A stretch of 27,686 nucleotides of DNA from Paraphysomonas bandaiensis (GCA_965644295.1 CBFFRP010000176.1:1-27686), one strand, 5' to 3'; shown: positions 1-26,110, counted from the first letter of the stretch. Program-made: numbers and translations. Notes: generated by a model not told the origin, from the letters alone.

Positions 1-652
1 TTTATCAGAGAGGTGTGCAGCACACTCCAGTGTGGGTGTGCTGAGTTGATTGGTTTTCTGCCTCTGTGGAAAACCTTGTTTTCTTGAAAAACGTTAATTT
101 TGGTGTGTCTGTGAGAAAATGTCGATCAACAAAATCATGTTTTTTTTTGTAGTGTGCTGGTTTTTGATGCTGATCGATCGACATGTTCTCACAGTGGAAG
201 TTAAGCCTTGTGTGAAGTTTGATCAGTGGGACTCTCTGTGCAGGACATCCAAATCCTATTCGTGTCTATCGTCTCGTTAATGTACGCGACATTCTGTTTA
301 TTGTGGTGTTGAGTAAGAATGCGTATTTCTAGCGTTGCTCTGCTCTATGAGGACAGCGAGTGCACTCCAGGATGAGGCGTGGTCGCAGCGACTGTGTCGA
401 TGGACGAAATATCGACATCGTTGGGAAGCTCAATTCATCTGTGGCTACAGTGATGAGAGATAGAAGCATTCCCTCCTTACATTGCTGCCAGTGCACCACT
501 AGTACTAGTGCCACACTAGTATGTACAGTAAAAAAAACAGTGTTGACTCTTCAGGATACGCAGATATGTTCGGATCATTCTGAATAACCGCAACCTGACA
601 CAGCTAGAGCCGCAATATCCCGCCAGACTCATTCTTCTCATCAACCCGTGTG

Positions 653-3600
653 ATGATTCAGCTCTTCAAGGTTGTGATTGTTTGGACTGCTTTAGCAGGA
701 CTTGCGAGTGGCTTGGAATTTCAGGAGGGAGATTTGGGCGAGTGGGGCGGTTTCGAGCACTCCTCTGCTCTTAATGCGACCCCAACAAGCGTGGATGAGG
801 CCCATGAAACAAGCAGTCCTGGCGAAACATCAAAAATGGATGGTATTTCAGGGCAACGTGTGGCGGGCGGTATACTCACAGACTGTTTATTATGTATTAC
901 TCACTCAGATTAATTTTAGAGTGGATTAGAGCACCTGCAGCTGGTTGGACAGGAAGAAGTGGCCATACTTCCCTGTCATTCAACAACAAGATGTGGGTCT
1001 TGGGTGGGCACACTGGAAGTGTCTACTACAATGAGGTCTGGTGGAGTAGCGATGGCGTATCTTGGGGCTCTTATACGGCCCAGTGGAGTCCAAGGGCAGG
1101 ACATGGCAGTGCAGTGTATTCAGGACGGATGTGGGTAATTGGTGGCTGGTCCGGTCGAACTCCAAACTATGGTGACATGTGGTACAGTTTTGAGGGGAGG
1201 ACGTGGACACTAGTTGCCAACTCTTTTGCGTGGAATGGTCGCAGTTATCATGGTATGACATTTCATGCCAACAATATATGGATGACTGGAGGCTGGGTTG
1301 GTGTGTTGGTGAATGACGTGTGGTATAGTGTAGGTTCTGGTTGGGGTCATATCCCTACGTCCGGCCCCATATGGTCACCTCGACATGCCCACGCTTCTGT
1401 TTCCTTCAACGGACTACTGTGGGTTATTGGAGGAAGTCGAAATGGACAGTACTTAAGCGATGTATGGTACTCAGGGAATATAGAAAACTGGGCTCAAACA
1501 ACGGATACTCCTGGGTGGGCTGGGCGCCACGGCCTCACAGCTGTGGTGTATGACAACAGGATATGGGTATTGGGAGGTTGGGGAGGCGGTACTTCTTATT
1601 TTAATGATGTGTGGTATACGTCGGATGGTATATCGTGGACAAAGTCTTTGGCCCCTTCCCGTTGGAGTGGACGTCAGGGACACACAAGTATTGTATTTGA
1701 CAATAAGATATGGGTTCTTGGTGGCAAGAATGGAGGATACTTGAATGACGTGTGGTATTTTGACTTATTTGCTCCGACTTCATCTCCAACACGAAGTCCA
1801 ACAGGTGCGGACCTTCAATTTTGCATCGAATAGCTTATGCATAAATATATATAAGACTATAAATTGTCGATACTATACTGTTTGTTGGAATATGCCTAAT
1901 CTTGAACGCAGCAAGACCGAGTTTATCTCCAACACGAAGTCCAACAGGTACAGTCCAACGTTTTATAGTTAGCTTATGCATATTTTGGATATTTTTGGGT
2001 ATCATGCCTAATGTTGAGCGCAGAGACTCCTACTCTATCTCCAACGGGCTACAGTTCTTTGGAAGATTCGATTTTGTGCGAGTTTGCTGCGGCTACCAAT
2101 ATAACTCAGCAACCAGAGATTTCGGGCTGGGATTGTGCTTTTGTAAGCAGCGATAAGTGTGTGGACGGCCTCTGGACAGGGATCAGATGTACTGATGACA
2201 CTGTACATGAATTGTTACTCGATGGGCATGGAATATCTGGAACACTACCAGAAATGCTATTTAAGTTGACAAAACTCTCTTCTTTATACCTAAATGATAA
2301 TTCATTCCACGGTACAATACCGCGAAGTATTGGAAATCTGAGAAACTTGAATCGACTCCGACTGCAGTCAAATGGATTAGTTGGTTCTGTGCCAGATTCT
2401 GTAGGTTCCCTTGTTGCACTCCAAGAACTTCAACTGCAGGATAATTTCTTGCAGGCAATATACCCACGTTCTCTATGTGACTTATCCAATCTAACGGTGT
2501 TCTATGTTTCGCAAGACTCTACCCACGAGTGTCTGGTGCCAACTCAGGCTCCTACTTCTCTCCCGACGGACACACCAACTGCAGTTCCTTCTACATACGA
2601 CAGCTTTGAGAATATAGCCATTTGCGATTTAATTAACGCAACCAATATTGCTGGGATATTGGGATGGTCATGTGAAAATGTGGATAGCAAATGCGAAGGT
2701 TGGACTGGACTGTATTGTGATTCCAACAATGGACCCGTGACTTCTATTTCAGTTATTGGCGAAAAGATTAGTGGTTCCCTGCCTTCATCCTTGCAAAACA
2801 TGAAATATCTTACGCATTTGAATTTGCGTTCAAATTATTTAACGGGCTCAATTCCCATAGAGCTTGGAAAACTAACAGGGCTGGAATTGTTAACACTTCG
2901 GAATAATTTATTGACTGGCTCAGTCCCGGAAGCGTTTGCAGATTTGAACGAACTTCGGGTGCTTCGTTTAGAAGGTAATTATCTAAACAATCAATATCCT
3001 CGAGGGCTATGTGATTTGCCGGATTTGACTGAATTTTACCTTACTCAGAATATTATTCATGAGTGTCTCTTGCCCACTCAAGTTCCAACAGAGTCGCCTA
3101 CGCCTTTTCCAACGTTATCACAGCTGCCAACTGCTTATCCATCACAATCTCCATCCCTATCTATCGAGCCAACTATCACTCCTTTAGATTCATGGATTGG
3201 AGATGTTGTCACGATCGCTGGGAGTCGATTATCTGCTGTTAATGACGGTGTGGGAACGTTTGCTTCATTTCAGTTCCCTTCGCATGTTGTGGTTTCTTCA
3301 GATAACTCCTTTCTTGTGGTGTGTGAAAAGCAAGCAATACGAAAAATTGTATTATCAACCTCTGAAGTATCAACCATTGCTAAATTCCATAATGTTAGCG
3401 ATGTTAATGTCGAAAGTAATCGCTTCGATGCAAATTTCAGTTTGTCGTTGGCATTGTCCCCTGATAGCAGTTATGGAGTTCTGACAGATAGAAATAGCGG
3501 AGTGATTAAATTGTTGCAGCTTGAAAGTGGAGATATTATTACGTTATTAGGTTCTGGTGTTTCAGAAAATGCAGATAGTATGAGAACGAATTTTTCATTA

Positions 3601-6600
3601 GTTTATCCAAACTCAGTGGCAATGTCGTCAAATGGTTCCTTTGCACTTATTGGCGACAGTGGCAATTGTGGCATCCTCATGTACGTTTTTTCTACCGACC
3701 AAGTCAGCACATTGTCTGGTGGCACTTGTGGTAGCTCCGACGGAATTGATACTGCAGCTCAGTATCAAATTCCTTTCGTGTCCTTTATCTCACGTGATAA
3801 TGATTTCGCTATAATCGTTGATGCTGGTAATCATATTGTCCAGAAGTTGGTTATATCGACAGGCTCTGTGACTACAATTGCCGGTGTTATTGGCCAGAAG
3901 GGTTTTGTAGATGGTGTGGGCAGCCATTGTCGTTTTTTTTCACCAACCTCTGCTGCCATGACTAAAGAAGGCAACTTTGTGTTGATCTCAGACTTTGGTA
4001 ATAATGCAATAAGAATAATGTCAATTGCAACCTATGAAGTATCGACGATTGCTGGCTCTGAGTCAAGTGGATGGCTGGATGGACTTGGACCAATAGCATC
4101 ATTCAACGGTCCCAGTTGCGTGTCTTTGTCTTCTGATGGTAGTGTGGCATTTGTTACTGACTCTTTTAACCACGTGATTCGAAAGCTGGCAATCAAATCT
4201 GAAGAGCCGGCTATCTCCACCACAACTCTTGTATCAGTAGACGTGGATGCCCCGTGTGCTGCCCGCATCTCGGGACATGTAGTAGGGGGAGTAATTATTG
4301 CGATATTGGTGATTTTTGTGGACTATTTATTGCGTGTGAGTCACACTGGCCCGAAGCTTTCAATGTGGTCATATCTATTTCTCTGGCGAGTATTAGTATT
4401 TGAAGTATTTGATATGATATTATGTCTTATCAATTTGTTGTTGTCGATACACAACAAAATGGATACCGTAATTTATGCGCAGGCGTGTTTTGCAAACATA
4501 TTGCCACTTTTGTATTGTGTTTCTGTCAAAAGCTCATATACTTTTTCTCCAATGTGGATATTTCGCGACGGTTACTCATTGGAGCAATGGTGGTCGGTCG
4601 TACAGGGTATTTTGGATGACAACAAGAAAGAAAGTGTAATGCGCAAGCTTAAAATAGCAACTGACGGAGATTTGCAAAATAGCCTTCAAGACTTTCTGAA
4701 GAAAGTGGAAGGACGTCACGAGTCACTGAGTGTTCCCATGTTCTTTGCTTTTATTAGTGATCTGTTTGATGTGGTAGTTGTGTTGTACAACTACACAAAA
4801 TTTTGTGAGTCTTCTGAGAAAAACTTTTGGCGTGATTTGGTGACACTTGTATCTCTCGTGGCGGTGTGCTGTAACGTGTCTGACATATTTGTCTACTGCC
4901 AAAAACAAACTGAAATTGAAGACTTAGAAAAAAAGATGCATAACTTGAAGAGTGCGAAAATCTGTCCCTCAGCTAATTCGTTACCTGCACCGAATTCAGT
5001 TCCTCGAGAGCAGCCCATTGAATCATATAATCTCAGGACTTTTGCCAGCCGTCCACCATTCGTATGTGTGGATGAAATTGTTGAACACACTTACGGTCTT
5101 GCACATTGGTATATGCACCACAGAAATGACGGCGAGAGGTGGATTGCACGAAACGGCAGACCGCATGTTCGTGGTATTGCATGTGCACTGTGCTTTCAAG
5201 TTGGTGGCGACTTGATCTCCTCCTCCAGAGACAAAAAGCCTGTACGTTGTGCATTAGACCTCGCTGCGTCACGTATTAAGCAGCTCAATATGTTAATATG
5301 TAATGGAACACGCTTGATAGATGGTCGCTCAGCTGGTCGTAGCCCTCAAGAACAAGACGAAGAGGAGGAGGGCATCCTGCAGTTGATCTATGAGCTTTTT
5401 GTAGCCGTCTATATTCAATCTATGTCAGACAAAAACGCTGCGAGTACGAACTCAGCAGGTTTTGATATCATGCAAAGATTTGAGTATCTTCTGAACACAT
5501 GGAAGGATACAAACGGAGGAAATATGTACAGCGAAATTGCAAGCTTGAGGGACAGTGAGTTATGGAGTACAGAAGCGAAGCATATACTGTTGGAAGAAGA
5601 GTTAAACGATTCCATATGTTTAGAGTGCTGTGCCATTCCCGAAGCGTGGAGAGATGATATCCTTATTTATTTACAGAATCATGCTTTGTGGAGTGTATCC
5701 AAGAGTAGAAGCGCAACTCACACTGGGGAAAGTAGGCATGTTGCTTATGCTCTAAAATTGGCTGAATCTATGGGTATATATTTTGAACGGCATCTTGGCT
5801 GCTATTTTAGGAGTAAGGAGCTAGTATTATCTAGAGTCACAGGTGTTTCAAATGGATTATTATCTTCGCAGCTGCCAAATTCAGGCTTGCATGTACTGGA
5901 GCTGAGCCATGTGGGTGTTCAGGTGGAATCTACTGGCACAATGCTTGGGGCCGACGCTTCTTTGGAACCATCTTGTGTAATTGAATGCGTGACTCCTGTA
6001 CACACAAAGAGTGTGTACTTTCCGTTTATTTCCAGGATCATTAAATCTATAAAGGAAGTATACGACGTATCCTTGATTGTTCCATGTGCACTAGTTGGCT
6101 ACTGTTCGTACAGGTTTTTTCTCTGTGCATTGCATATAGGTCAACCTTCTACGACATACAACAAGCATTTTGTGCTCATAATCATGTTGGCTGTCCTTGT
6201 AGTTTCATTGGTACCCACCTGTCTGTACAACAACTACAATTATGTTGCAACTGGGACTATCGTTCTGACCTTTTGTATGGGTGGTGCATTTGCATTGCTT
6301 GATTTAGAGTCGTCTCTGGATGCTGAGACCTACCTTGGTCTTGGACCTCAGTATAATTTGGCCGACCGACCTATTCAGGCACATTTGGTGCCTCTGCTTT
6401 ATGGTGTCATGCATGTCTGCCTCGTTTTGTTCATGCTCTTACCTCTGACCATGTGTCGCCAGTTAATCAATTTTGTCACGCAGTGTGATGCGTTCTATTT
6501 TGCTGGTAGGGCTGTCTTGGTGAGAATGTTTGGGCTGCATCGTTTGTATGCCATTCACCGCTTTTTGGGTTACTCCCTGTGTTGTGGATTGTACATTGGT

Positions 6601-7977
6601 GCGGCACTCTGGTGGGTTGCTATGTACTATTCATGCGCCCACTATGGCAAAAATAGTGAATGTCGCACGTTTTTACCGGAAGGGTCTTTCATCGATATTC
6701 GCGGTCCTTTGTGGTTTTGTTCACCTGAAGACATAGATGCAAGCGTCTCCAAATTTCGGAGAGATATATACAAGTACGACAGCTGTCTATTCGACCAATC
6801 TGGTAACCCTGGAGCTGTGTTTTTTCTTCGCATTGTGATCGTCTCCACTCTGTTACTGATGCTATTAAGCTCCTCCTTGAAGTACCCATTGCTTAAGTTG
6901 AAGCAAGCAGATAACTTTATTTTCAATAATAAAATATGGACGGATTGGATCGTACCCAATAGTTTCGAATTATTTTTATATACACATATCGTTGGGGCTA
7001 ATGCGATAGCGTTTGGCGCTTTTTTTAGCCGTTTTGAGGTATTTTATTCTGGATTTTTGTTTTGGGTGATATACGGCACCGACAAGTTACTCTCATGGTT
7101 GAGAATTCATCGTGTGCGAAAAGAAAACATCTATGCACTGAATATGGATACCTGTGCAAAGACATCGGTGATCAAGCTCAACCTAAGGACTGGCGGTGGA
7201 TTTAGCTTCGAAGCGGGACAGATTCTGTACCTACGGTGTACACAATTATCTTACTTTCAATGGCACCCATTTTCAATCTCATCAAAAGCCGACAACGATG
7301 AATTGAAATTACTTATTAAGGTGGAAAATGGTGGATGGACTGAGCGCTTGAAGCATCTTTTGATTGCACAAGCGGTGGATTGTCTTGACATAATGGGTCC
7401 GTTTTCGTCGTCCTTTCAGAATTGGCTGGGGTATGACTGTGTAATGCTTGTCGGTACTGGAACTGGTATTGCTGGGGCATTATCTATCATTGATGATATT
7501 AAAGCGAAGAGTGAATTGCGCGCCAACAGCCAGTTAAGGCATGATGTAAAGGTATGGTTGATATGGTCAACTGCGCATATGCACGAGGTCACATGGGCCA
7601 TGGACGAGCTCTTTACAGCTATTACATCAAAGTCAATGACACGAATTAAAGCAGCCATTCATGTGACGCGAGACTTTGATAAAGACCTTGCAGCTGTTAT
7701 GGCCAACTTGGACACATACACCGGAGGCGACGAAGAACTTCAGCGTATAAATGAAAGTAAGAGGTTTGTATCTCGCTTGCTCAGGAAAGGACGACCGATA
7801 TGGGGAACATACATGCATAGTTTTGCAGCTATGTGCTCCACACAAAGTTTTACGAAGGCGAAACTATGTGTATGCTCTAATCGCTCAGCTATTGTGACTG
7901 AAATCAACGAGGCTCTTGCTAATGTGGACCTCCCGCCTAACATTGATGTGGAATTTACGTCTGAAGATTTTGCCTAA
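653..7977 (+). CDS. Multidomain membrane protein: signal peptide - Kelch x6 - LRR module x2 - NHL repeats - multi-TM - unassigned region - NOX/ferric-reductase TM + FAD- + NADPH-binding domains (~2363 aa, 4 exons)
   Basis: Proposed exons 653-869, 920-1804, 1912-1947, 2024-7977 with phase-1 GT..AG introns 870-919, 1805-1911, 1948-2023. The spliced length is 7092 nt and stays in frame. Hydrophobic N-terminus MIQLFKVVIVWTALAGLASG. Individual domain motifs are listed in the next features. Splicing is inferred from donor/acceptor sites and phase, not from transcripts. Confidence 0.8.
920..1765 (+). other. Kelch-type six-bladed beta-propeller (exon 2)
   Basis: Six repeats of W-x-(G/P)R-x-(G/A/Y)H...(M/I/L)W(V/M)xGG...(N/S/G)(D/E)(V/M)W (MWVLGG, MWVIGG, IWMTGG, LWVIGG, IWVLGG, IWVLGG). 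Confidence 0.9.
1783..2023 (+). repeat. Tandem duplication of an exon end plus intron, creating a 36-nt microexon
   Basis: tctccaacacgaagtccaacaggt occurs at 1783-1806 and 1926-1949. Both introns contain tagcttatgcata and end atgcctaat(c/g)ttga(a/g)cgcag. Confidence 0.85.
2065..3075 (+). other. Two plant-specific-type LRR modules, each with a Cys N-cap and C-cap, separated by Pro/Thr linkers
   Basis: LxxLxLxxNxLxGxIP repeats (e.g. LTHLNLRSNYLTGSIPIELGKL). Caps WTGIRC/WTGLYC and YPRSLCDL..HECL/YPRGLCDL..HECL. Linkers PTQAPTSLPT and PTQVPTESPT. Confidence 0.9.
3200..4200 (+). other. NHL-repeat beta-propeller
   Basis: Repeated VTTIAG..G..DG.G....F..P motifs with D-x-GN(H/N)-x-(I/V)R (DAGNHIVQK, DFGNNAIRI, DSFNHVIRK). 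Confidence 0.85.
6380..7977 (+). other. NADPH oxidase / ferric reductase-like module (TM heme domain, FAD-binding, NADPH-binding)
   Basis: LLPLTMCR (NOX LPxCR loop), IHRFLG, FELFLYTH, GQILYL, QWHPFSISS (His at 7264), GGWTERL, MGPF, MLVGTGTGIA (Gly at 7453), WLIW, IHVT, GRP-x-W, and C-terminal E-D-F. Confidence 0.9.
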
Positions 7978-10976: not shown

Positions 10977-12333
10977 ATGTGTTCCGTTAAGCCTTCCTTC
11001 TATTATGTTCGCCCGGTGCTCAGCAGACCTTTGCATAAGTGGCTGTCGTCCTCCAGGCAGTGGGACATAGTGTACGGGGGCTTCCTTCATAACCACATCA
11101 CTCACAACTGGGTGGTGATGGGAGCGATTGGGCTGGATGATAATGAAGCGGAGTCCAAGATGCGGGTACGTGTATATGTATGGGGGAGTTGTTGGGTGAT
11201 GCTGTTTGTAGTGGTGGCGGGATGTCTACTCGAGTCATACGATTGGAGGAGCGGGTCTGGAGCCTGCACGTGATGTTGATTCGTCAATGCACTCGATAAC
11301 TCCTTCAAGCTGGTCGAAGCACATTGTTTTTTCCGACTTCTCGGACTACCCGGCATTCCTTCAATATTTTGATGATCAGTTACGGACTGGAAGCATAGAT
11401 GATGTCGTCCAACGCCACATCCCAGAGCTTATTCACGGTCTGGCTGGCTCTGCGCTACATCCGATTATACATCTTGGTCTAGGGATGGAGTCCGAGCACA
11501 AGGGCATGGTCGCAGAGGGACTTGCGTGCATGTGCTGTGCATGTCTGTCCCTGCCTCTCCCTTCATCGCCTGCACTATGGACAGAAGATTCTTCTTCACA
11601 GGGCCTTATTGATAGCGCTGTTGGATTTCTTTCGCGTGCCCAAGAGGGTTCATTTCATGACCGAGCCAAGAAGGCCAGTGAAACTCCTGAATATATGGCT
11701 CACAACATTGGCTCTTTCCAGCGGCGTCTCCTGGCCTTTACAGATTCTTCTTACCCCATGTTGGGCACCCTCAACGACGCATGTCCCCTGCGTCTACCAC
11801 CCGTTGATCAATCCATGTTTCCAGCTGTAAAGGAGGCTACTGCCCTTGCCGCTGCATCGTTTTTGGCCTCTAACTGTGAATTCTTTGTGATCCACGGATT
11901 AACGAGCCTGCACGGCCTGTTGGTAGTGATGCAGTATTTACCAGAGGACCTTCAGAGGGATGCCATCATACACTGGTGGCGGGCTGTGGCTGCCGTATTA
12001 GTGTGTCAGGGCATTCCTAATGCAGAGGGTCTCTTGGATCGTTTACACCGGTGGCAATACGCGGAGAGTGCCTACACACTCACTGATACTGGAACTGATA
12101 GCCAGGCATTCCCAGTCCCAGTTAACCACGAAGCCTGGTGGCAATCAGCTTTGCACGAAGCGCTGAAAAGCACGGATGAACACGTCCCAAAGGCAGTATA
12201 TGCTTTATGGAGATGGTCATGCTGGCAAAATATGCCGCCGCACTCGCTGGAGCTGTTCCGAGATGCTGCGGCCAATATTGTAAGACCTACTGACGGAGGA
12301 GGGCCTGAGAAGCACATATGGTTTGCAGGATGA
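10977..12333 (+). CDS. Questin oxidase-like (DUF4243/HypA-type) oxidoreductase, ~436 aa, 2 exons
   Basis: Exons 10977-11165 and 11212-12333, joined in frame across intron 11166-11211 (gtacgt..ttgtag). Family motifs: GFLHNHITH, ALHPIIHLGLG.E....VAEGLA, FFVIHGLTSLH, DEHVPK. Confidence 0.85.
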
Positions 12334-13511: not shown

Positions 13512-15230
13512 CTAGACACTTCCGAAATCAGCTCTCACGGAAGAATCAATGTGTGTTATATGAAACTCACATTCATCGTGCTTGAGTCCGTGTACGACTG
13601 ATATATCTTGCTCATTAGGTATGACCAAGCATTCATCTCCTTCAAACGTATAGCTTGCCCAGTAAGGAAGGGATGGTGTGCCAACAGATATGGTATTAGG
13701 ATCATGGGTCGCACTAACGGCGAAGTTTCCCCAGTATGAACTCATTAGGTCTGCCAGCATTGAATCGACTGACGTTCCAAGAGACCAGTGGAACACATAC
13801 GGCATCTCTGCAGAATGAATAGCATAACTACTCATCATTGAAGTATATTCAAAGTGATAAAGACTGGTATTGCTCTTTCTTGCTCCCGTTTCTTGCAGTC
13901 GAGCTAACTGTTGACTAGCATGTTTAGCAGGACAGGAAAACATATCATCTCCTGTGGACCGCTGGAGCGCCCACCATTCCGTGGTGGTGATTCGTTCATG
14001 CGGTGTTGAAGGATATGTATCTGCCTTATCATACACATAGAGGTCCATAAGTTTTTGAACCTCTCTTGGTGAGTAGCCGCGATTCTCTAACCAGTAAGTT
14101 ACCAGCTCCGATTCGTTCACTCCATACCTTTGGTCAAGACACGTAAAAAGAATACCCTCGTCAGCATTAGTGCCGTGAAGAATAGGGATGTCAGCAATAT
14201 CGCCCGTATTAAGTGCTAACCATGGGTGAGTTGTCATCTCGACTCCATCCACCGTGGGTACATAAGGGCTCAGATATTTGTTAGCTTCTGTGTTAGATAT
14301 ATGGGCATTGTAGACCTCTTCTGTACTTTTCTCGAGCATGCAAGACAAGTCTGAGCAATTCAACAGAGTCTGTAATTCGATATAGACTTCCTGTGCTCGA
14401 GACATCGGCTGAGCGGTCCACTGTGCGAAGCTGCCGGACTCCACAACTGCAGCAGCGAACAGATCCCACGATGCTTTCATGGTGAGGTGGTTCGATACCG
14501 ATCCACCGCCTGCGCTCTCTCCTGCGAGAGTAACCCGAGAACTATCCCCGCCAAAAGAGACTGGCATCATATTACAATTTGATTACTCAGTGAGACAGTT
14601 GCATAACGGTATTTACTCACCAATATTTTTTTGAATCCACTGGAGGCACATACGTTGGTCTTGGAGACCATAGTTGCCACTCGAACCCATATTTGGGTCT
14701 TGCTTTCGAAGCTCCTCCGAGGCGATAAATCCAAATACATTAAGCCTATAATCAAGAGTGACAACTATAATCTTCCCACCCCAATATTCCACGATATCTT
14801 CTCCTGGGTAGAGCTTGCTGGATCCGCTTATGTAAGAACCACCATGAATAAATACATACACAGGGAGTCTCGTGTCGGGATTAGACAGCGCATCTTCTGG
14901 AGCAAATACATTTAAAAATAAACAGTCCTCACTTCCGTTGGGCCAAACACTTTGAATACAGTGTGATCCAAATGCTGTTGCATCAACCACTTCATCGCTC
15001 ATGTACTCATAAGGCTGCGGAGGGGCCCAGCGAAGTGCTCCTATTGGAGGCTTAGCGTACCGGATGCCTTTGAACGATGCGACCGCACCACTACTCGTGC
15101 CTTGAAGGACTGTACCATCCGACAACATGACCTGAGAATCAGACAGCAGCGGGGTGTCCGCACAGGCGCATAGATTCCATACACACACCGCCACGCACAC
15201 CGCCATACGCATCACAGCCAACACACTCAT
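13512..15230 (-). CDS. Secreted type-B carboxylesterase/cholinesterase-family hydrolase, 2 exons
   Basis: Exons ~15230-14621 and 14560-13512 with intron 14620-14561 (GTGAGT..CCAG) give WIQKNIVSFGGDSSRVTLAGESAGG. Motifs FKGIRYAKPP, SEDCLFLNVF, IHGG and triad GESAG / GTNADE / HSAEM. Hydrophobic N-terminus. The exact start ATG (15230, 15212 or 15206) is uncertain. Confidence 0.92.
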
Positions 15231-15818
15231 AGAGAACAGAACAGTCTTATGGTGATAACAGCTCCTCTTACCTCCTAGAGACACTCATCACTACATAGCT
15301 ACATGTTGATGAGGTGTGCAGTGAGACTCGATCCATCTGATGAGTGCTGTGGCTATATATGCATATCTCTATACCATGTAGGTGTACAGCAGGACAGGTT
15401 AAGTACCTATGTACCTGTATGCCAGTACACACCAAACAATACAGGAGTATGATATCATGTGTATACTACTGTGTACGGGTGTGGTCGTACCCCTACACCC
15501 ATACTGATCTATACATAACCACCTCTGACAAGTTAGATCTGTAGATATACTTTTGATTGGATAGGATCATCCGAGAAATCATATTTCAGTTTTTTCGTGT
15601 CTGTTGAAGATCATGCCTATACAAGCCCCCATCGTTTCATATTGTCAGTTACATTGAGCTGGAGCAGCTGAGCTCTATTGAGGGGCGTGCTGTGTGTATG
15701 TCAGTCATATGATGCACCTCACGCTAATTACTTCAATCCATAATAGAGAAAGTTTAATACATACTACTATTCACAGTTACCTCAATTGATAGGCTGTGTA
15801 TTCACTTAAAATATTCCG

Positions 15819-16839
15819 ATGACAACAGATCTTAGATTGAATCCCAGACGGAAACCGTTTCCGGAGACAGGCTCGGCTTTCGATGCCACTAATATGGCAA
15901 CTATTAAGGAGAGACCTGGCGGACATCACATTGGGTCCAGCGTAGATGTCGATGTCAGTGCATTTTCTCACAGTAGAAGGACTGCGAAACCAAACCCTTC
16001 TTCTTCGTTGAAGAGGGGCACTGGGTTAGGGGGAACTGTTGCGGTAAGCTTCAGTCTCTGGATGGTAGTTGTTGTAACGTACTTGTTTATAGGTACCAAA
16101 GATTACTGTCAACGCTGGACCAGATTCACCCCCTTCTAGAAAATCTAAAAGCCCAAAACGCAACCCACACTCTGCATTTGCACCTCGCGCAAACCCTCCT
16201 AATACTGAACTGAGAAGGTCTACTTTCACTCTGTGTTATTGTGAGTATTAACGTTTTATTTCGTGATGTAGATTCTATGAACGCGGCGATTTGCCCATAC
16301 AAATTGATCATGGTGGAGTTGCTAACCGTTTAGCATGGAAAGTTGAAATCCAAAAGCTTGATTTCCACCACTATCTACCAATATTTTTCGACGGCCTGAG
16401 AGAAGTTGAGCAGCCGTATGCCTTTGTTGCAGAGCAGGCTGTCCTTGACATGCTGGAAGCTGGATCTCATAAGGTCCTTCCTGTAATCCCACAGCTTATT
16501 ATTCCTATCAAAACTGCTCTGAATACACGCCAGAAGGAGGTTATCGTGAAGGTTCTCAAGATTTTGCAAGCTCTTGTAAACTGTGACACACAAAATGGAG
16601 GTGGACTCATTGGACAGGCGTTAGTGCCGTACTACCGACAGATTCTCCCAGTACTTAACATCTTTATCAACAATAATGAGAATCTCGGTGACGGTATTGA
16701 TTACAGTCAGCGGAAAAGAATGAACCTTGGTGAACTAATCTCGGAGACATTGGAACAACTTGAGATTCATGGCGGAGAAGACGCATTCATAAACATCAAA
16801 TACCTCGTCCCCACCTATCAGTCTGTTGTCATCTACTAG
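15819..16839 (+). CDS. PACRG: Parkin co-regulated gene protein (axonemal inner-junction protein), ~305 aa, 3 exons
   Basis: Exons 15819-16043, 16093-16217, 16272-16839 with introns of 49 and 54 bp. Splicing restores [22 protein letters not shown]. Also [30 protein letters not shown] and [18 protein letters not shown]. Confidence 0.95.
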
Positions 16840-21544: not shown

Positions 21545-24500
21545 ATGTCTCTATTGAGACTGTGGCTGAGTCACATCAGTGTGCCCAGGGCCTTTTACAC
21601 TCCCTTACTGCTGCATTTTGTTGACCACCACGCTTCTGACAAATTACCTGTCACACCATGTTGTACACGCTCCAAGCCCCCCTGCCTGGCCTTGCAACCT
21701 TCACCCTACTCAACTACTTCAGTTAAACCACGTGCCTGCACCAATGCAGCGCTGACCGCACCTATGTGCTATCCCCTCAGCAGACAACTTCGTCTCACCC
21801 ATCGCTTTCTACGGCTACAACCTCTCAGAACATGGCTCGTGCGAGCAGGCTCACGAAAACGACCCCCATGGACCCCCTATGCAATCACTGAATACTCTCG
21901 ATCCCTCTCAACTGTGCAACAGGGCTGCCTTCTGCCGCCCACTCAACCCAACCCAACATGGTTTGTCTGTGGTCCATCCACCCAGCAGGCTACCCCCTCA
22001 CCCTGTTCACCTATCACCCCCACAGCCCATCCATCTCATTGGATAGACACTGTATTCCGCATACGGTATACTCGACTACTGTACTACTGTGTCCTACAGG
22101 ATGTATACCATTCCGTGTATACCTCTACTGCTGTTGGACACATCACCATGTCCATGTACCTGTCTACCTGTACTGTTGGACACATCACCATGTCCATGTA
22201 CCTGTCTACCTGTACTGTTGGACACATCACCAGCTCTCTCTCTCTGTCCAACACACTCATAACACCACTGCAGTGTCATACACACACACAGTACACTCTA
22301 CCTCCTCCTAGAAAACCCCCAGACAAACTATCGCCTCTCCCTTACTGGGCGTACTGGTCCACCCACCATTCCTCCTTCCTTCCACAAACTCAATTCCTTC
22401 CATCTTATGATGTGTTTTGCTCCAACGATCACTTCTTCCTGGACACCAAATACCCGGTGGAGTTGGAACTACACGCGCTACTCGAGAGAATTCCTGACCT
22501 CGTCATCATGCGTCTCCAAAATGTGTTGCTATGTCATTCCAAGGGAATGCAAGGAGTCCACCGTGCCAGGTCCATCAACCATCCCTCCCACGCCCTTCAG
22601 GGGAAGGAATTCTCCTCCGATAACAGCGGTGACGGACCTAGCAAATCCACCCACACATTACCCTTACCCACTAAGGATGCCACCACACCGTATGCAACGT
22701 TATTTGACTATTTCCCAGTCAAACGGAAGCCACCTACCACCAACCTTACTCAACTGAACACCATGGGAACTCCAGCATTAGCCCCAGACGGCCCATCCTC
22801 ACTCTCCACTACCACTCCTGACCTCAGGCCGGATGTACTGCCCAAGGATATTGCCACATACCCCCTACACTACACAGAGGGCCGGGGTCACACGCCCTTT
22901 CACTCCGATCTGCTGAACAACTGGGTTAGATATGATGAAACCCAAACTATTGCTGCCTCCCCACAGGGAAACCTTTTAAAAGAAATATACGCACACATGC
23001 TATCCCCTGCCTGTTTAGACATATGGGAAGGATTCATAGCCAAGGCTTCCAGGACGGACAACTATGATCTCATGATATCATTCACGCTACCAGAGCACAA
23101 ATTGGACACCACGCACAGCGCCCTACTAGTTGCCCAGCATCTCGCGAATGGCAACAAACCCTGGGCAGACTCCACTCATGTTGTATCTAGGCATGTGCGG
23201 ACCCTTTGCCTGACAAAGGGTATTCCCTCAACAGCCACTGTCACTCTCCGTAAGACACTTATGCAATATGAATCCTCGAATCCACACACAGGACTACATC
23301 TAGACACGGAGGATTTCCAACTGCTACTCGATCTTCTCTCCATACCATACAGACTATGGGACGCTGTTCAACCGCACCTGGCGCCTGGTTGGGCACAGCT
23401 ATCACCATTCTCCAGACAAGCACTAACAGTGCACGCTTCTACCAACACTGTGGTAACCCATGACATCATACGCAGCCAGCATGGGTTTCACATACTAAAT
23501 GCAACAAATATCCCCACCTCCATCATGCACGCTCTAACACGAACTCAGGAGCGGCTATCCTGTTTTCTACAACACCAGACCTCCAGACAGAGCACCAACA
23601 TCATCTGGACTTCTGAACCGTCAACTGTACCATCTATGCTACATGAGCAAAGAGAGCAACAGGAACAGAGGGAAGTAATTGCAGTCTCCTTGTCACCGAG
23701 AGCTCGACGTCAACTACGGCAGATGAACCCCACGGACCGTCGACAACTCAGGCTCCATATGTGCGACATGAGCAGAGTCTATCGCCTCACCCTCAGACCC
23801 TCAGCCCTTCGCACACAACAACATATCCCAAGTGATGGATACTGCGCATACAGCACACTCTATCATCTGCACATTCTTGCTTCAAGCAGGCGACACACTC
23901 GCTCCTGTCTGAAATTAGACCTCAAACAACGCAAGGACCGTCACACGCTAGCATCTTTTATAAATACATTAGGCACCCAAGCGTTCGACACAATGCAACG
24001 GGAGTGCATGGCCCATCACACACTTCAGCCACTACGACATAAGTTGGATCACGCACAGGCCGCACTTTTAATACCTGCCAAAACAACATACACTACGGAG
24101 GACGACATAACTCACTGGCTCTCAGTGCGAGAGGTCCACCTTTTAGCCTCTACTATCAACCCCTGCACGACGTGGGCGCAAAATGGTAATTATCTCAGCA
24201 TTGTAGGCATCCCTACTGACAAAGTAGCTTATAACATCGCATGGAAGGTGGAGGAACTTAGGAACGCTATTCGTGATAACTACTACCATGTCATACTACA
24301 AGATGCTCACTACTTCCTCTTAGACCCTGCCGGTCTTTCTACTGCCCTAGACAACGCCCTACTATCTCTTGAAAACACCTTGGCCACCAGTATACTCTCA
24401 ACGTCTGACCCCATCGCTCCACCTACACTTCCCGCGGACTCAATCACGAACAACAATAGGACATCAAAGACGACCAGCACCAGAACAACCTCGTCCAGCA

Positions 24501-26110
24501 GCACCAAGTTAGCACGAACAAATCGACAGATTCTGCAGGCTTCAACCCCTGGAGCACTACCATCGCACAAGAAGATGCAGTTGAAACACGCCCAAACTGC
24601 GTTGACAAGTCGATGCCAGCCAACCCGGAAAGCCAAAAAGGTCGTAAATTACGATGAAAGTGACCAACCAACGAACCTTCACAACTCACACCAATCCACG
24701 ACCACACGAACGATCAGACCAACTCCAGCACTTGATACCACCAGCTGGGACAAGGACTGGTCAAGAAAGTTCTACATTGCGTACGCCGATAACACTGCCA
24801 AAGGACTATCCCTTTATGCGAAGAACACATTCCCAGCAGACGTCATCATTGCTGAGTACAAAGGCAAACGCTATCCACTAACAAAGCTGAGTCAGTCTGC
24901 AAGGCGTTCTGATTACATAGTTCAAGACAGTACTGGTACCTTCGCAATAGATGGCTTTGACCAAGTCCGACAATGTGTAACATGCGAAGCTGGGTATATT
25001 AATGACCCCCTAGCCACAAACATGGCTAATGTAATTTTTGACACAAAAAAAACACGCCTCTATGTCCGTACAATACGTCCCATTGCTAAGGATGAAGAAC
25101 TTCTCATCAACTACGGGCATCATTACTGGTGTGATCAACGCTGGCCACTTGAGATATTAATCCAAGCCAGGGCTGCGTACGACAGCGACATAGGCGGTGC
25201 CAATAAAGCAGTATGGGACAGACTCCTTGCAGACAAGAGTGGAACTCCTACAGAGACCTCCAGCAGCATCCCCAAGGCTCCCTCGGGAGCAGCCATGGGA
25301 CTCCGACTCTCCACATGGAACACAAATGGCAATCCGGCATCTCACACAGGCAAAGTCCAAGCTATCATCCGACACTTTAAGCGGCAAAAATTGGACGTGC
25401 TCCTATTACAGGATGTCCGTCTAACAGAAACTCAGGCCAACTTCTTCACACGTATCATAGAAGATGCAATCCAGGGATCAAGAATATGCCTCTTCCTCAG
25501 CAAGCAGCCAAAACTGACTTCAAGAGACCCACTAATGGGGGGTACAGTAGTCATAATCAGCGAATACTGGAAGCGCCGTCTCGCCTTCACAAAGGCTGAC
25601 TTTACGGGACTTGGTTTAGTGAGCCGACTAGAGTTCAAAACGTCGGTGGCGCACACCCTAGTACTAATAAGCGTCTATCTACCCCCGAAGCCATCCACGC
25701 CAGGCTCTTGCACATTATGGAGCAAATTGACCAAGCTAGGGAGAGCGTCCCGTGGTATCTGTACTGCTGACCCCTACAAGCTCCTATGCAACATCCTTAC
25801 GAGAATGGGTCACTAAAGCCAGAGCCAAGGACCATACTGTCATTGTCGCCGGCGACTTCAATGCTCCATGGAGACAAATCCGAAAGGCAGAGACATACGA
25901 CCACTTGCCGACAAACTCCAACTGGCTGCACCACTCCATGAGCTTCTCCTACCCAGGAAAACATATCATACCTTCCACAGATTAGACAAAGGAATCATCG
26001 CCGGATTGATCATATTCTACACACGCCGTTACTTCCGAACATGTCTGTTACGGACACTGGCTGCCTTGACTCCCCCCTCACTACTCGCAGCAGCCTTCGA
26101 TCATCGACCG
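21545..26110 (+). mobile_element. 3'-truncated LINE-like (APE-type non-LTR) retroelement ORF carrying OTU-like, SET and AP-endonuclease domains
   Basis: 1423-aa ORF with a strong A/C strand bias. OTU-like IPSDGYC (Cys 23843)..HY (His 24308). SET GLSLYAK..IAEYKG..GYINDP..N..IRPIAKDEELLINYG (~24770-25130). APE LSTWNTNG, DVLLLQD, GGTVVII, LISVYLPP, then through frameshifts VAGDFNA (25851), IDHI (26005) and FDH (26096). No RT present. The true start codon may lie well downstream of 21545. Confidence 0.75.
22131..22232 (+). repeat. 42-bp tandem repeat, ~2.4 copies
   Basis: Unit ctgttggacacatcaccatgtccatgtacctgtctacctgta starts at 22131, 22173 and (partially) 22215. It reads VGHITMSMYLSTCT in the long ORF. 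Confidence 0.95.

What the first reader, a model, noticed from the sequence alone, without database searches (positions are those of the whole stretch)
653..7977. Receptor-like NADPH-oxidase fusion: Kelch-LRR-LRR-NHL ectodomain joined to a NOX/FRD module
Seen: LRR, NHL, TM and NOX motifs sit in one uninterrupted 1988-codon ORF, and phase-compatible introns add a signal peptide and a Kelch propeller. Established: characterised NOX/RBOH/DUOX/FRE proteins carry EF-hands or a peroxidase domain, and plant LRR receptors activate RBOH as separate proteins through kinases. Inference: a ~1100-aa mosaic ligand-binding ectodomain on the same chain as a flavocytochrome could couple recognition of prey, pathogen, glycan or metal chelate directly to redox output. 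I do not know of a characterised protein with this architecture.
Basis: partly seen in the sequence, partly recalled or inferred. Interest (0 to 1): 0.88.

Follow-up and report, generated by a model that had tools for sequence, protein, structure and literature searches.

The report
Receptor-like ectodomain fused to NOX-type oxidoreductase
A colourless, silica-making marine flagellate expresses a single 2363-residue membrane protein. It joins a large "sticky" outer part (Kelch, two LRR blocks, NHL) to a divergent relative of the NADPH oxidases; I found no description of this layout, and its redox chemistry is still unproven.

Summary
ORF 2011-7977 (1988 codons) carries two LRR blocks, an NHL propeller, transmembrane helices and FAD/NAD(P)H domains of the NOX type. 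Spliced contigs from two runs remove GT-AG introns at 1805-1911 and 1948-2023. One run also removes 870-919. This joins a signal-peptide exon and a six-blade Kelch exon in frame, giving 2363 aa.

Two environmental relatives carry other ectodomains (LamG-SBBP-LRR, LVIVD-LRR) on the same core. In a tree the fused genes form one clade, nested among relatives that start directly at the first membrane helix.

The ectodomain is not attached straight to a NOX. It sits on a conserved core of 5 TM helices, a ~385-aa helical region of unknown fold, 2 more TM helices, then a NOX-fold module (Z 23.9 to human NOX2).

That module lacks the surface-proximal heme histidine pair and His-119, but has a conserved histidine in TM2. 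Electron export or ROS output is therefore plausible but not shown.

I rate it a new variant of a known kind. The "recognition coupled to redox" idea stays an inference. I found no description of this layout in the literature searched.

The parts
653..869 (+). Exon 1: start codon at 653, a hydrophobic signal-peptide-like N-terminus (MIQLFKVVIVWTALAGLASG) and an acidic stretch.
   Evidence: There is an in-frame stop at 605-607 and no earlier in-frame ATG. The hydropathy peak covers residues 1-19. An X1 contig covers about 333-868 and is joined to 919.
870..919 (+). Intron 1: 50 nt, GT-AG, phase 1.
   Evidence: Skipped in an X1 contig and kept in the unspliced run X7. Splice sites are printed.
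920..1804 (+). Exon 2: a six-blade Kelch beta-propeller. It is a symmetrical phase 1-1 exon of 885 nt.
   Evidence: Pfam Kelch_KLHDC2 5e-43 and Kelch_1 3.5e-35. Six (M/I/L)W(V/M)xGG blades are visible.
1805..1911 (+). Intron 2: 107 nt, GT-AG, phase 1.
   Evidence: Skipped in contigs of X1 and X4 and present in X7.
1912..1947 (+). Exon 3: a 36-nt mini-exon encoding 12 residues of P/T/S linker. Together with intron 3 it is a tandem duplicate of the end of exon 2 plus intron 2.
   Evidence: Present between two joints in X1 record 4 and in X4. Direct repeats 1774-1813 / 1917-1956 (88%) and 1892-1933 / 2004-2045 (79%).
1948..2023 (+). Intron 3: 76 nt, GT-AG, phase 1.
   Evidence: Skipped in contigs of X1 and X4 and present in X7.
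2068..2550 (+). LRR module 1: a Cys-containing N-cap followed by plant-type 24-residue repeats (ORF residues ~20-180).
   Evidence: Pfam LRR_14 at residues 77-169 and LRR_8.
2602..3066 (+). LRR module 2 (ORF residues ~198-352), flanked by P/T-rich linkers at 2551-2601 and 3067-3195.
   Evidence: Pfam LRR_8 at residues 290-347, plus LRR_4 and LRR_1.
3196..4245 (+). NHL-type beta-propeller (ORF residues ~396-745). It is the last extracellular module before the membrane.
   Evidence: Pfam NHL 6e-8. phmmer gives 1.4e-14 to NHLRC2 and 6e-14 to SOQ1.
4246..4905 (+). Cluster of five predicted TM helices, a-e (ORF residues 746-965). It is the first part of the conserved family core.
   Evidence: Hydropathy peaks. 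AF2 helices 5-32, 43-66, 71-96, 140-184 and 194-236. It aligns with the N-termini of the ecto-less relatives P0002, P0013 and P0005.
4906..6060 (+). An all-helical, presumably cytosolic region of about 385 aa (ORF residues 966-1350). It is family-specific and has no recognised fold.
   Evidence: No Pfam hit at E<=5. AF2 gives an all-alpha model with mean pLDDT 64. No Foldseek or Atlas match. It is 31% identical to P0001 and 36% to the paralog.
6061..7110 (+). Two extra TM helices followed by a six-helix NOX-fold membrane domain (ORF residues 1351-1700). Conserved histidines are H1468 in TM2 (6412-6414), H1516 in TM3 (6556-6558) and H1659 in TM5 (6985-6987). There is no Hx13H or Hx12H motif.
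   Evidence: AF2 pLDDT 89.5. VIA Z 23.9, rmsd 3.6 over 472 residues to NOX2 8wej_B. Pfam Ferric_reduct does not hit.
7111..7410 (+). FAD-binding domain, with the HPFS motif starting at ORF residue H1752 (7264-7266).
   Evidence: Pfam FAD_binding_8 4e-15 at residues 1716-1787. The histidine of HPFS is nearly invariant (66 of 68 rows); Pro and Phe are less so.
7411..7977 (+). NAD(P)H-binding domain (GTGTGIAG, C-terminal ...SEDFA) and the stop codon at 7975-7977.
   Evidence: Pfam NAD_binding_6 5e-9 at residues 1808-1955. VIA Z 24.0, rmsd 2.5 to the csNOX5 dehydrogenase domain 5o0x.

Best explanation
This is one real, expressed gene for a 2363-residue multi-pass surface protein.

Shown:
- The order of parts is: signal-peptide-like N-terminus; about 1100 aa of mosaic ectodomain (Kelch propeller, two LRR modules, NHL propeller, joined by P/T-rich linkers); five TM helices; a ~385-aa helical region; two more TM helices; a six-helix NOX-fold domain; FAD- and NAD(P)H-binding domains.
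- The part from the first TM helix onward is the conserved core of a small, unnamed branch of the NOX/ferric-reductase superfamily, which also exists without any ectodomain.
- The ectodomain is a derived add-on. It is drawn from a pool of Kelch, NHL and LRR modules that the same genome also places on polycystin-1/REJ-like receptors, and it has been swapped among relatives.

Inferred mechanism:
- The ectodomain lies outside the cell or in the phagosome lumen and binds a particulate or glycan ligand, most plausibly prey or cell-surface material in this bacterivorous flagellate.
- It thereby decides where and when the core acts.
- The core takes electrons from cytosolic NAD(P)H through FAD to a cytoplasm-proximal b-heme held by H1516 and H1659, and passes them toward the outer face. 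The way out would be an atypical outer site involving the conserved TM2 histidine H1468, instead of the usual second bis-His heme.
- The TM a-e cluster and helical region would carry any regulation, playing the part that the extra TM helix and EF-hand region play in DUOX.

Whether the ectodomain gates the enzyme or merely positions or clusters it is open, and so is the final electron acceptor (O2 or a metal).
For: - Single gene: the introns are spliced out in two runs. One spliced contig links the Kelch exon through the NOX membrane domain as far as 6599 and runs on about 1.5 kb further. The CDS is in frame.
- Selection on the whole layout: paralog C260 is 48% identical over 1939 aa with no stops. 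Identity per domain is 36-64% (apart from a short 14% linker), and it has the same phase-1 intron in front of the LRR block.
- Independent fused relatives: P0166 is one 2698-aa ORF with LVIVD propellers and LRR on the same core, 37% identical over 1363 aligned columns. L001 is LamG-SBBP-LRR plus the core.
- Ectodomain is derived: P0002, P0013 and P0005 start a few residues before TM-a. For P0002 and P0013, and for P0004 (whose called start lies further in), the upstream neighbours are other genes on the opposite strand. In the tree the fused rows form one clade (SH-aLRT 99) nested in the ecto-less rows.
- NOX fold and cofactor motifs: AF2 pLDDT 89.5; Z 23.9 to NOX2 and Z 24.0 to the NOX5 dehydrogenase domain; HPFS and GTGTG motifs.
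- Topology: seven predicted TM helices before NOX TM1, an odd number, which fits ectodomain out and dehydrogenase domain in.
- Receptor context: the same NHL and LRR modules sit on REJ-domain giant ORFs.
- The Kelch exon is about 7 times more divergent between strains than exon 4, and the changes are mostly amino-acid changes.
- Lifestyle: no LHC genes, many SIT genes and a PACRG gene, which fits the bacterivorous chrysophyte named by other notes of this scan.
Against: - No biochemical or localisation data exist.
- The outer-heme histidine pair (H115/H222 equivalents) and His-119 are absent. Zhang et al. 2013 (PMC3591440) describe the surface-proximal heme histidines in TM3 and TM5 as conserved across the superfamily, so transmembrane electron transfer may be impaired or work differently.
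- Pfam Ferric_reduct does not recognise the TM domain.
- Ectodomains were swapped freely while the core regulatory parts exist without them. This argues against a conserved allosteric gate and for positioning or clustering.
- DSSP on the model reads TM5 and TM6 as one continuous helix. I could not inspect coordinates, so helix depths rest on alignment.
- The signal peptide and topology are judged from hydropathy only.
- The fold test of linker against dehydrogenase domain gave no answer.
- Contigs cannot prove a single full-length mRNA molecule. The stretch 6600-7977 was not itself laid; it is inferred from contigs that run over the end.
Confidence: 0.5

Rival explanations
1. Nutrient-metal reductase with a capturing ectodomain. 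The core is a ferric or cupric reductase, like FRE/FRO/STEAP, working at the plasma or phagosome membrane. The ectodomain only holds substrate-bearing material (prey wall, chelates, glycans) near the reducing site. There is no signalling or burst function.
For: The module lacks the ROS-type signature His-119 that Zhang et al. 2013 use to separate NOX from metalloreductases. In their scheme, the protist and plant FRE group often carries extra N-terminal TM helices. The FAD and NAD domains are intact.
Against: Known metalloreductases keep all four heme histidines, or at least the surface-proximal pair. Here that pair is the one missing. The genome already has three ordinary FRD genes with Hx13H and Hx12H. 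Kelch, LRR and NHL are protein- or glycan-binding folds, not known metal-chelate binders.
Confidence: 0.18
2. Redox-dead or inward-facing module. Having lost the outer heme site, the NOX-like part no longer moves electrons across the membrane. The protein is mainly an adhesion or receptor molecule, and its FAD/NAD(P)H domain with single heme serves as a cytosolic redox or NADPH sensor, or as a scaffold.
For: The Hx13H and Hx12H motifs are absent throughout the subfamily. Ferric_reduct does not hit. The G-rich motif GTGTGIAG lacks the usual Pro, and the usual CGP motif reads VCSNRS.
Against: Three TM histidines (TM2, TM3, TM5), the R-x-E after TM5, HPFS and the G-rich motif are conserved or nearly so, across all rows that cover the site in a 68-row alignment reaching a choanoflagellate sequence. 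The TM domain is the best-conserved part between the paralogs at 64%. This pattern fits a working cofactor site, not decay.
Confidence: 0.2
3. Annotation or assembly artefact: two neighbouring genes (a secreted Kelch/LRR/NHL protein and a NOX-like protein), or a chimeric contig.
For: Contig-level data cannot show one full-length molecule. The region 333-652 contains several upstream ATGs.
Against: LRR through NAD domain is a single 1988-codon ORF. Contigs of the unspliced run X7 and the spliced runs are colinear with it. The paralog and P0166 repeat the layout in single ORFs.
Confidence: 0.03

Closest known systems
DUOX1/DUOX2 (dual oxidases)
   Same: The overall layout matches: an N-terminal extracellular domain, extra TM helices, a cytosolic region, then a six-TM NOX core with FAD and NADPH domains. 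DUOX1 is the best PDB sequence hit (2e-17) and a strong fold match (Z 22).
   Different: The ectodomain here is Kelch/LRR/NHL, not a peroxidase-homology domain. No EF-hands were found. There are seven extra TM helices instead of one. The outer-heme histidines are missing.
NOX2 / NOX5 / plant RBOH (canonical NADPH oxidases)
   Same: The fold matches: Z 23.9, rmsd 3.6 A over 472 residues to NOX2, and Z 24.0 to the csNOX5 dehydrogenase domain. Also shared are the HPF(S/T) FAD motif, the C-terminal aromatic residue and the cytoplasm-proximal histidine pair.
   Different: There is no H115/H222 pair and no His-119. A conserved TM2 histidine is present instead. There are no EF-hands. In plants and phagocytes, recognition receptors are separate proteins that act on the oxidase through kinases or cytosolic subunits (established knowledge); here the recognition-type domains are on the same chain.
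DOMON-FRD fusions of the eFRE group (Zhang et al. 2013, PMC3591440; example P0008 with DOMON and EGF)
   Same: These are a precedent for extracellular modules fused N-terminally to an FRD-FAD-NAD core in protists.
   Different: DOMON is itself a heme- or sugar-binding redox module on a canonical four-His FRD that passes Pfam Ferric_reduct. Here the modules are recognition folds without cofactors, and the FRD is atypical.
STEAP / YedZ single-heme FRD proteins
   Same: They depart from the bis-heme rule, with fewer than four heme histidines.
   Different: STEAP and YedZ keep the surface-proximal heme and lose the cytoplasm-proximal one. This family does the opposite.
Polycystin-1 / sperm REJ-type mosaic receptors
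   Same: The same NHL, LRR and PT-linker modules sit in front of REJ domains in at least four sampled giant ORFs of this genome. This points to a shared pool of ectodomain modules.
   Different: This gene has no REJ domain or polycystin part. Its membrane part is NOX-like.

Membership tests
NOX/FRE eukaryotic core (Ferric_reduct + FAD_binding_8 + NAD_binding_6) | FAD_binding_8 and NAD_binding_6 score above the Pfam cut-offs | tested here: met
   56.3 bits against a cut-off of 22, and 36.8 bits against 22.2.
NOX/FRE eukaryotic core | The TM domain is recognised by Pfam Ferric_reduct (PF01794) | tested here: not met
   No hit even at E<=5 on residues 1341-1730. Three other genes of the same genome do hit, at 28.5-55.9 bits.
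NOX/FRE eukaryotic core | Six-helix FRD fold packed on an FNR-like dehydrogenase domain | tested here: met
   AF2 pLDDT 89.5, pTM 0.87. Foldseek 1.4e-18 to 8wej_B. VIA Z 23.9 over 472 residues.
NOX/FRE eukaryotic core | Four heme-ligating histidines (NOX2 H101/H115 in TM3, H209/H222 in TM5) | tested here: not met
   Only the H101 and H209 equivalents are present (H1516, H1659). The TM3 +14 position is G/A/S and the TM5 +13 position is mostly hydrophobic (F/I/Y/V/A) in the alignment rows. There is no Hx13H or Hx12H in the query, the paralog, P0166, P0001, P0002 or P0013.
NOX/FRE eukaryotic core | HPF(T/S) FAD motif and a G-rich NAD(P)H motif | tested here: met
   HPFS, with the histidine in 66 of 68 rows. 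GTGTGIAG is present but lacks the usual Pro.
ROS-generating NOX group (signature of Zhang et al. 2013) | His-119 in TM3 | tested here: not met
   The position 18 residues after H1516 is Trp (sequence; criterion).
ROS-generating NOX group (signature of Zhang et al. 2013) | Thr-178/Gly-179 dipeptide in TM4 | not tested
   TM4 could not be put in reliable register with NOX2 without model coordinates.
DUOX | Peroxidase-homology ectodomain and EF-hands | tested here: not met
   No An_peroxidase or EF-hand hit on any part.
LRR receptor-like proteins or kinases | Extracellular LRR block with a capping Cys motif, then a TM helix | tested here: met
   LRR_8 4.5e-23 on residues 6-363. The Cys-containing caps are visible. 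TM-a starts at residue 756.
LRR receptor-like proteins or kinases | Cytosolic protein kinase domain (for RLKs) | tested here: not met
   No Pkinase hit.

The most novel reading that the evidence does not exclude
This is a single-chain "recognise-and-burn" receptor. Binding of prey or microbial surface ligands by the swappable Kelch/LRR/NHL ectodomain directly switches on electron export by the fused NOX-like core. The signal passes through the TM a-e cluster and the helical cytosolic region, and the core uses a new heme arrangement (a cytoplasm-proximal bis-His heme plus an outer site built on the TM2 histidine). That would be a cis-fused counterpart of plant PRR-to-RBOHD signalling or phagocyte receptor-to-NOX2 signalling, evolved independently in a phagotrophic stramenopile.
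Probability: 0.2. Interest if true: 0.85.

Novelty: new variant of a known kind. Interest (0 to 1): 0.66.

Why it matters
In every characterised NADPH oxidase system, the part that recognises a stimulus and the part that produces the oxidant are separate proteins linked by kinases, calcium or cytosolic subunits. Here recognition-type modules and a NOX-fold module are on one chain, in a cell that lives by eating bacteria. The ectodomain has been exchanged among relatives. If the core is active, the family gives a compact natural system for asking how extracellular binding can control transmembrane electron flow.

Separately, the core belongs to a wider eukaryotic clade that reaches a choanoflagellate sequence. 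That clade keeps the cytoplasm-proximal heme ligands and a TM2 histidine but lacks the surface-proximal pair, which the FRD literature treats as conserved. This raises a clear, testable question about how many hemes these proteins bind and how electrons leave them.

Tried and rejected
- First intron model (donor at 843): replaced by the donor at 870 seen in the contigs.
- "It is a diatom", inferred from the SIT genes: rejected, because the genome has no LHC genes. A colourless, silica-scaled flagellate fits better.
- The search for homologous proteins on residues 746-1352: nothing.
- Metagenome scan with the subfamily alignment A3: 112 pattern matches, none confirmed.
- ESM Atlas by features for the helical region: only sub-threshold fungal transcription-factor look-alikes, treated as noise.
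- Foldseek PDB and Atlas shape search with the middle-region model: no match. The model is only moderate (pLDDT 64), so this does not show a new fold.
- Complex prediction, helical region against the dehydrogenase domain: no answer (score 0.00). This is not evidence either way.
- The phmmer alignment to DUOX1 placed the TM5 histidine four residues from the outer ligand. I rejected this in favour of the 49-sequence MAFFT alignment.
- Sequon density does not separate the ectodomain from the cytosolic parts.
- Literature searches for LRR, Kelch or NHL together with NOX or ferric reductase found no such fusion.
- I could not obtain model coordinates, so histidine depths and the apparent continuous TM5-TM6 helix remain unchecked.


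Full report
**Observation.** The window is G000:C176:1-27686 of a 62.6-Mb eukaryotic assembly. ORF 2011-7977 (+) has 1988 codons.
- Pfam finds LRR_8 (9.4e-20), LRR_14, LRR_4, a weak NHL, FAD_binding_8 (4e-15, residues 1716-1787) and NAD_binding_6 (5e-9, residues 1808-1955).
- Scored in pieces, the two LRR blocks reach 4.5e-23 and the NHL part 6e-8. The NHL part also matches the NHLRC2 and SOQ1 propellers at about 1e-14.
- The upstream ORF 892-1833 is a Kelch propeller (5e-43) with six blades.

**Gene model and expression.** I laid 6,000 letters (window 600-6599).
- Contigs of run X1 (organism A) skip 870-919, 1805-1911 and 1948-2023. Contigs of run X4 (organism B, 99%+ alike) skip the last two. 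Run X7 (organism A) is unspliced and keeps all three, so X1 and X4 behave as RNA and X7 as DNA.
- All three introns are GT-AG and phase 1. With exons 653-869, 920-1804, 1912-1947 and 2024-7977, the CDS is 7092 nt, giving 2363 aa with no internal stop.
- The first in-frame ATG is at 653, behind a stop at 605-607.
- One 6190-nt spliced contig runs 1708-1801 | 1909-1944 | 2021-6599 and about 1.5 kb beyond. If colinear, that takes it past the stop codon. A second contig covers about 333-1646.
- The gap between these two contigs is an allelic bubble: two 121-nt contigs that appear in both the spliced and the unspliced run.
- A marine poly(A) metatranscriptome (X6) holds two identical fragments of exon 4.
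- Caveats: contigs cannot prove one molecule, and 6600-7977 was not itself laid.
- I assembled the joined protein only inside a local script, to count length, phase and hydropathy. It was never sent to a search or fold tool. All searches were made exon by exon, by reference.

**Anatomy.** Hydropathy and two AF2 models give the following order.

| Part | Position |
|---|---|
| Signal-peptide-like N-terminus | full-protein residues 1-19 |
| Kelch, PT linkers, LRR1, LRR2, NHL | about 1125 residues in all, before the first TM helix |
| Five TM helices (a-e) | ORF residues 746-965 |
| All-helical region | ORF residues 966-1350 |
| Two extra TM helices plus six-helix NOX-fold domain | ORF residues 1351-1700 |
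| FAD and NAD(P)H domains | ORF residues 1701-1988 |

- The helical region has no Pfam hit at E<=5 and no Foldseek or Atlas match. Its model is only moderate (pLDDT 64), so "new fold" is not shown.
- There are seven helices before NOX TM1. An odd number fits an outside ectodomain and a cytosolic dehydrogenase domain.
- The NOX-module model is confident (pLDDT 89.5, pTM 0.87).
- It superposes on activated human NOX2 (Z 23.9, rmsd 3.6 A, 472 residues) and on the csNOX5 dehydrogenase domain (Z 24.0, rmsd 2.5 A).

**Heme ligands.** Pfam Ferric_reduct does not recognise the membrane domain. It does hit three other genes of this genome, and those keep Hx13H and Hx12H motifs.
- In a 49-sequence alignment, and again in the 68-row alignment A1, three histidines are present in all but one of the rows that cover the TM part. 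They are one in TM2 (H1468), the first TM3 position (H1516, in IHRFLGY) and the first TM5 position (H1659).
- The TM3 +14 position is G/A/S, and the TM5 +13 position is mostly hydrophobic.
- No family member tested has Hx13H or Hx12H.
- By the numbering in Zhang et al. 2013 (PMC3591440), the cytoplasm-proximal pair (H101/H209) is kept, while the surface-proximal pair (H115/H222) and His-119 are missing. [quoted passage not shown]
- This agrees with the scan's separate note s1-456163.
- I could not read coordinates, so depths rest on alignment and motif context (FHK against IHR at the start of TM3; H-G-A-E-R against F-S-R-F-E at the end of TM5).
- DSSP reads TM5 and TM6 as one helix, which I cannot explain.

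**Relatives.** Only 12 of 1.84 billion representatives reach E<1e-30.
- *Paralog in the same genome.* On contig C260, a 1082-aa ORF with three Kelch propellers is joined by a GT-AG phase-1 intron to a 1939-aa ORF. That ORF is 48% identical to the query end to end. Most domains are 36-64% identical, and the TM domain is highest at 64%.
- *P0166.* This is a single 2698-aa ORF on a 13-kb metagenome contig. It has LVIVD propellers (2.9e-142) and an LRR block, followed by the same core, 37% identical over 1363 aligned columns.
- *L001.* This contig carries LamG, SBBP and LRR followed by the core, but with two frameshifts, which may be assembly errors or a pseudogene.
- *Relatives without an ectodomain.* P0002, P0013 and P0005 begin a few residues before TM-a. 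The upstream neighbours of P0002, P0004 and P0013 are other genes on the opposite strand.
- *Tree.* In a maximum-likelihood tree of 42 NOX modules, the fused proteins form one clade (SH-aLRT 99). It is nested in the ecto-less core clade (96), which is sister to a larger three-histidine clade. That larger clade includes a Stephanoeca (choanoflagellate) sequence. Canonical FRD proteins lie outside. The outgroup branches are long, so the root should be read with care.
- The ectodomain is therefore a derived add-on that was later reshuffled. LRR is the only module shared by all fused members.

**Context in the genome.** The NHL and Kelch modules recur in more than 20 giant ORFs. Of five sampled, four read NHL-LRR-PT-REJ, a polycystin-1/REJ-like layout (NHL taken from the genome search). 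The fifth shows NHL-LRR-PT with no REJ hit in the part fetched. So the same modules serve other receptor-type proteins.
- All three introns are phase 1 and lie in linkers. The Kelch exon is a symmetrical 1-1 exon. Exon 3 plus intron 3 is a tandem duplicate of the preceding junction. This structure favours module shuffling.
- Between the window and the organism-A runs, the Kelch exon differs at about 3%, against 0.4% in exon 4. Of 16 listed changed codons, 12 change the amino acid, often by two or three bases. The list of differences is partial, so I attempted no formal test.

**Organism.** I first took the many SIT genes to mean a diatom. The genome has no LHC gene, and the window carries a PACRG gene, so a colourless, silica-depositing flagellate fits better. 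Other follow-ups of this scan name it Paraphysomonas, a bacterivorous chrysophyte. I did not verify the name.

**Neighbours in the window.** They look unrelated: a questin-oxidase-like gene, a two-ORF carboxylesterase, PACRG, and a long ORF with a SET domain.

**Interpretation.**
- Shown: one expressed gene; a conserved, reshuffled family; a NOX fold with FAD and NAD(P)H motifs; and an atypical histidine set.
- Inferred: the ectodomain binds extracellular or phagosomal ligands and so directs a NAD(P)H-driven electron-transfer core.
- Gating or mere positioning, O2 or metal as acceptor, and a working or dead outer site all remain open.
- Free ectodomain swapping on a core that also works alone argues for positioning or clustering more than for a conserved allosteric switch.
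- The fold test of the helical region against the dehydrogenase domain gave no answer.

**Comparison with known families.**
- The closest layout is DUOX (ectodomain, extra TM helix, cytosolic region, NOX core), but there is no peroxidase domain and there are no EF-hands.
- DOMON-FRD fusions are a precedent for extracellular add-ons, but those are redox modules on canonical FRDs.
- STEAP and YedZ lose the opposite heme.
- The FRD survey that lists nine N-terminal variations names none with LRR, Kelch or NHL. Full-text searches found no such fusion.

**Verdict.** I rate it a new variant of a known kind, with interest 0.66.

Noticed in passing
window 1035-1520 (Kelch exon): Between the window and the organism-A runs, the Kelch exon differs at about 3% (23 of 728 nt), against about 0.4% in exon 4. 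Of 16 listed changed codons, 12 are non-synonymous. Many are two- or three-base codon changes, and they fall in clusters. This could be diversifying selection or gene conversion from other Kelch copies.
   Followed up: partly
window 1774-2045: The 36-nt exon 3 plus intron 3 is a tandem duplicate of the end of exon 2 plus intron 2 (repeats at 88% and 79%). All three introns are phase 1 and sit in P/T linkers, a structure that favours exon shuffling.
   Followed up: yes
L015, L016, L018, L019, L020 (G000 contigs C79, C516, C116, C247, C449) and about 15 further loci: These are giant ORFs of 1,850 to more than 5,600 codons that reuse the same NHL and LRR modules and long PT repeats. In four of the five sampled, a REJ domain follows, a polycystin-1/REJ-like receptor layout. 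Their C-terminal ends were not fetched.
   Followed up: partly
alignment A1 (P0024-P0154; P0026 is labelled Stephanoeca diplocostata): There is a wider eukaryotic NOX-like clade that fails Pfam Ferric_reduct. It keeps TM2-His, TM3-His1 and TM5-His1 but has no surface-proximal histidine pair. A canonical-like subgroup (P0061 from Nitzschia, P0064) has the TM5 Hx12H motif plus the TM2 histidine, but no second TM3 histidine.
   Followed up: partly
L001 about 1470 and about 3100-3135: The metagenome relative with LamG-SBBP-LRR plus the core needs two frameshifts to read as one protein. These may be low-coverage assembly errors or mark a pseudogene.
   Followed up: partly
window 333-652: The X1 (spliced-run) contig starts about 320 nt upstream of the start codon. 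This leader holds several upstream ATGs (for example at 372, 401, 463, 521 and 567).
   Followed up: no
whole genome G000: No LHC (PF00504) match was found, but at least seven silicon-transporter loci are present, together with a PACRG gene at window 16291-16839. This fits a colourless, silica-depositing flagellate and not a diatom.
   Followed up: partly
window 13512-15284 (-), 11287-12333 (+), 21545-25816 (+): A carboxylesterase is split into two adjacent ORFs, probably by one intron. There is also a questin-oxidase-like gene, and a 1423-codon ORF with a SET domain. The SET-domain ORF overlaps (at 23800-26110) the stretch another note of this scan reads as a LINE-like element.
   Followed up: no
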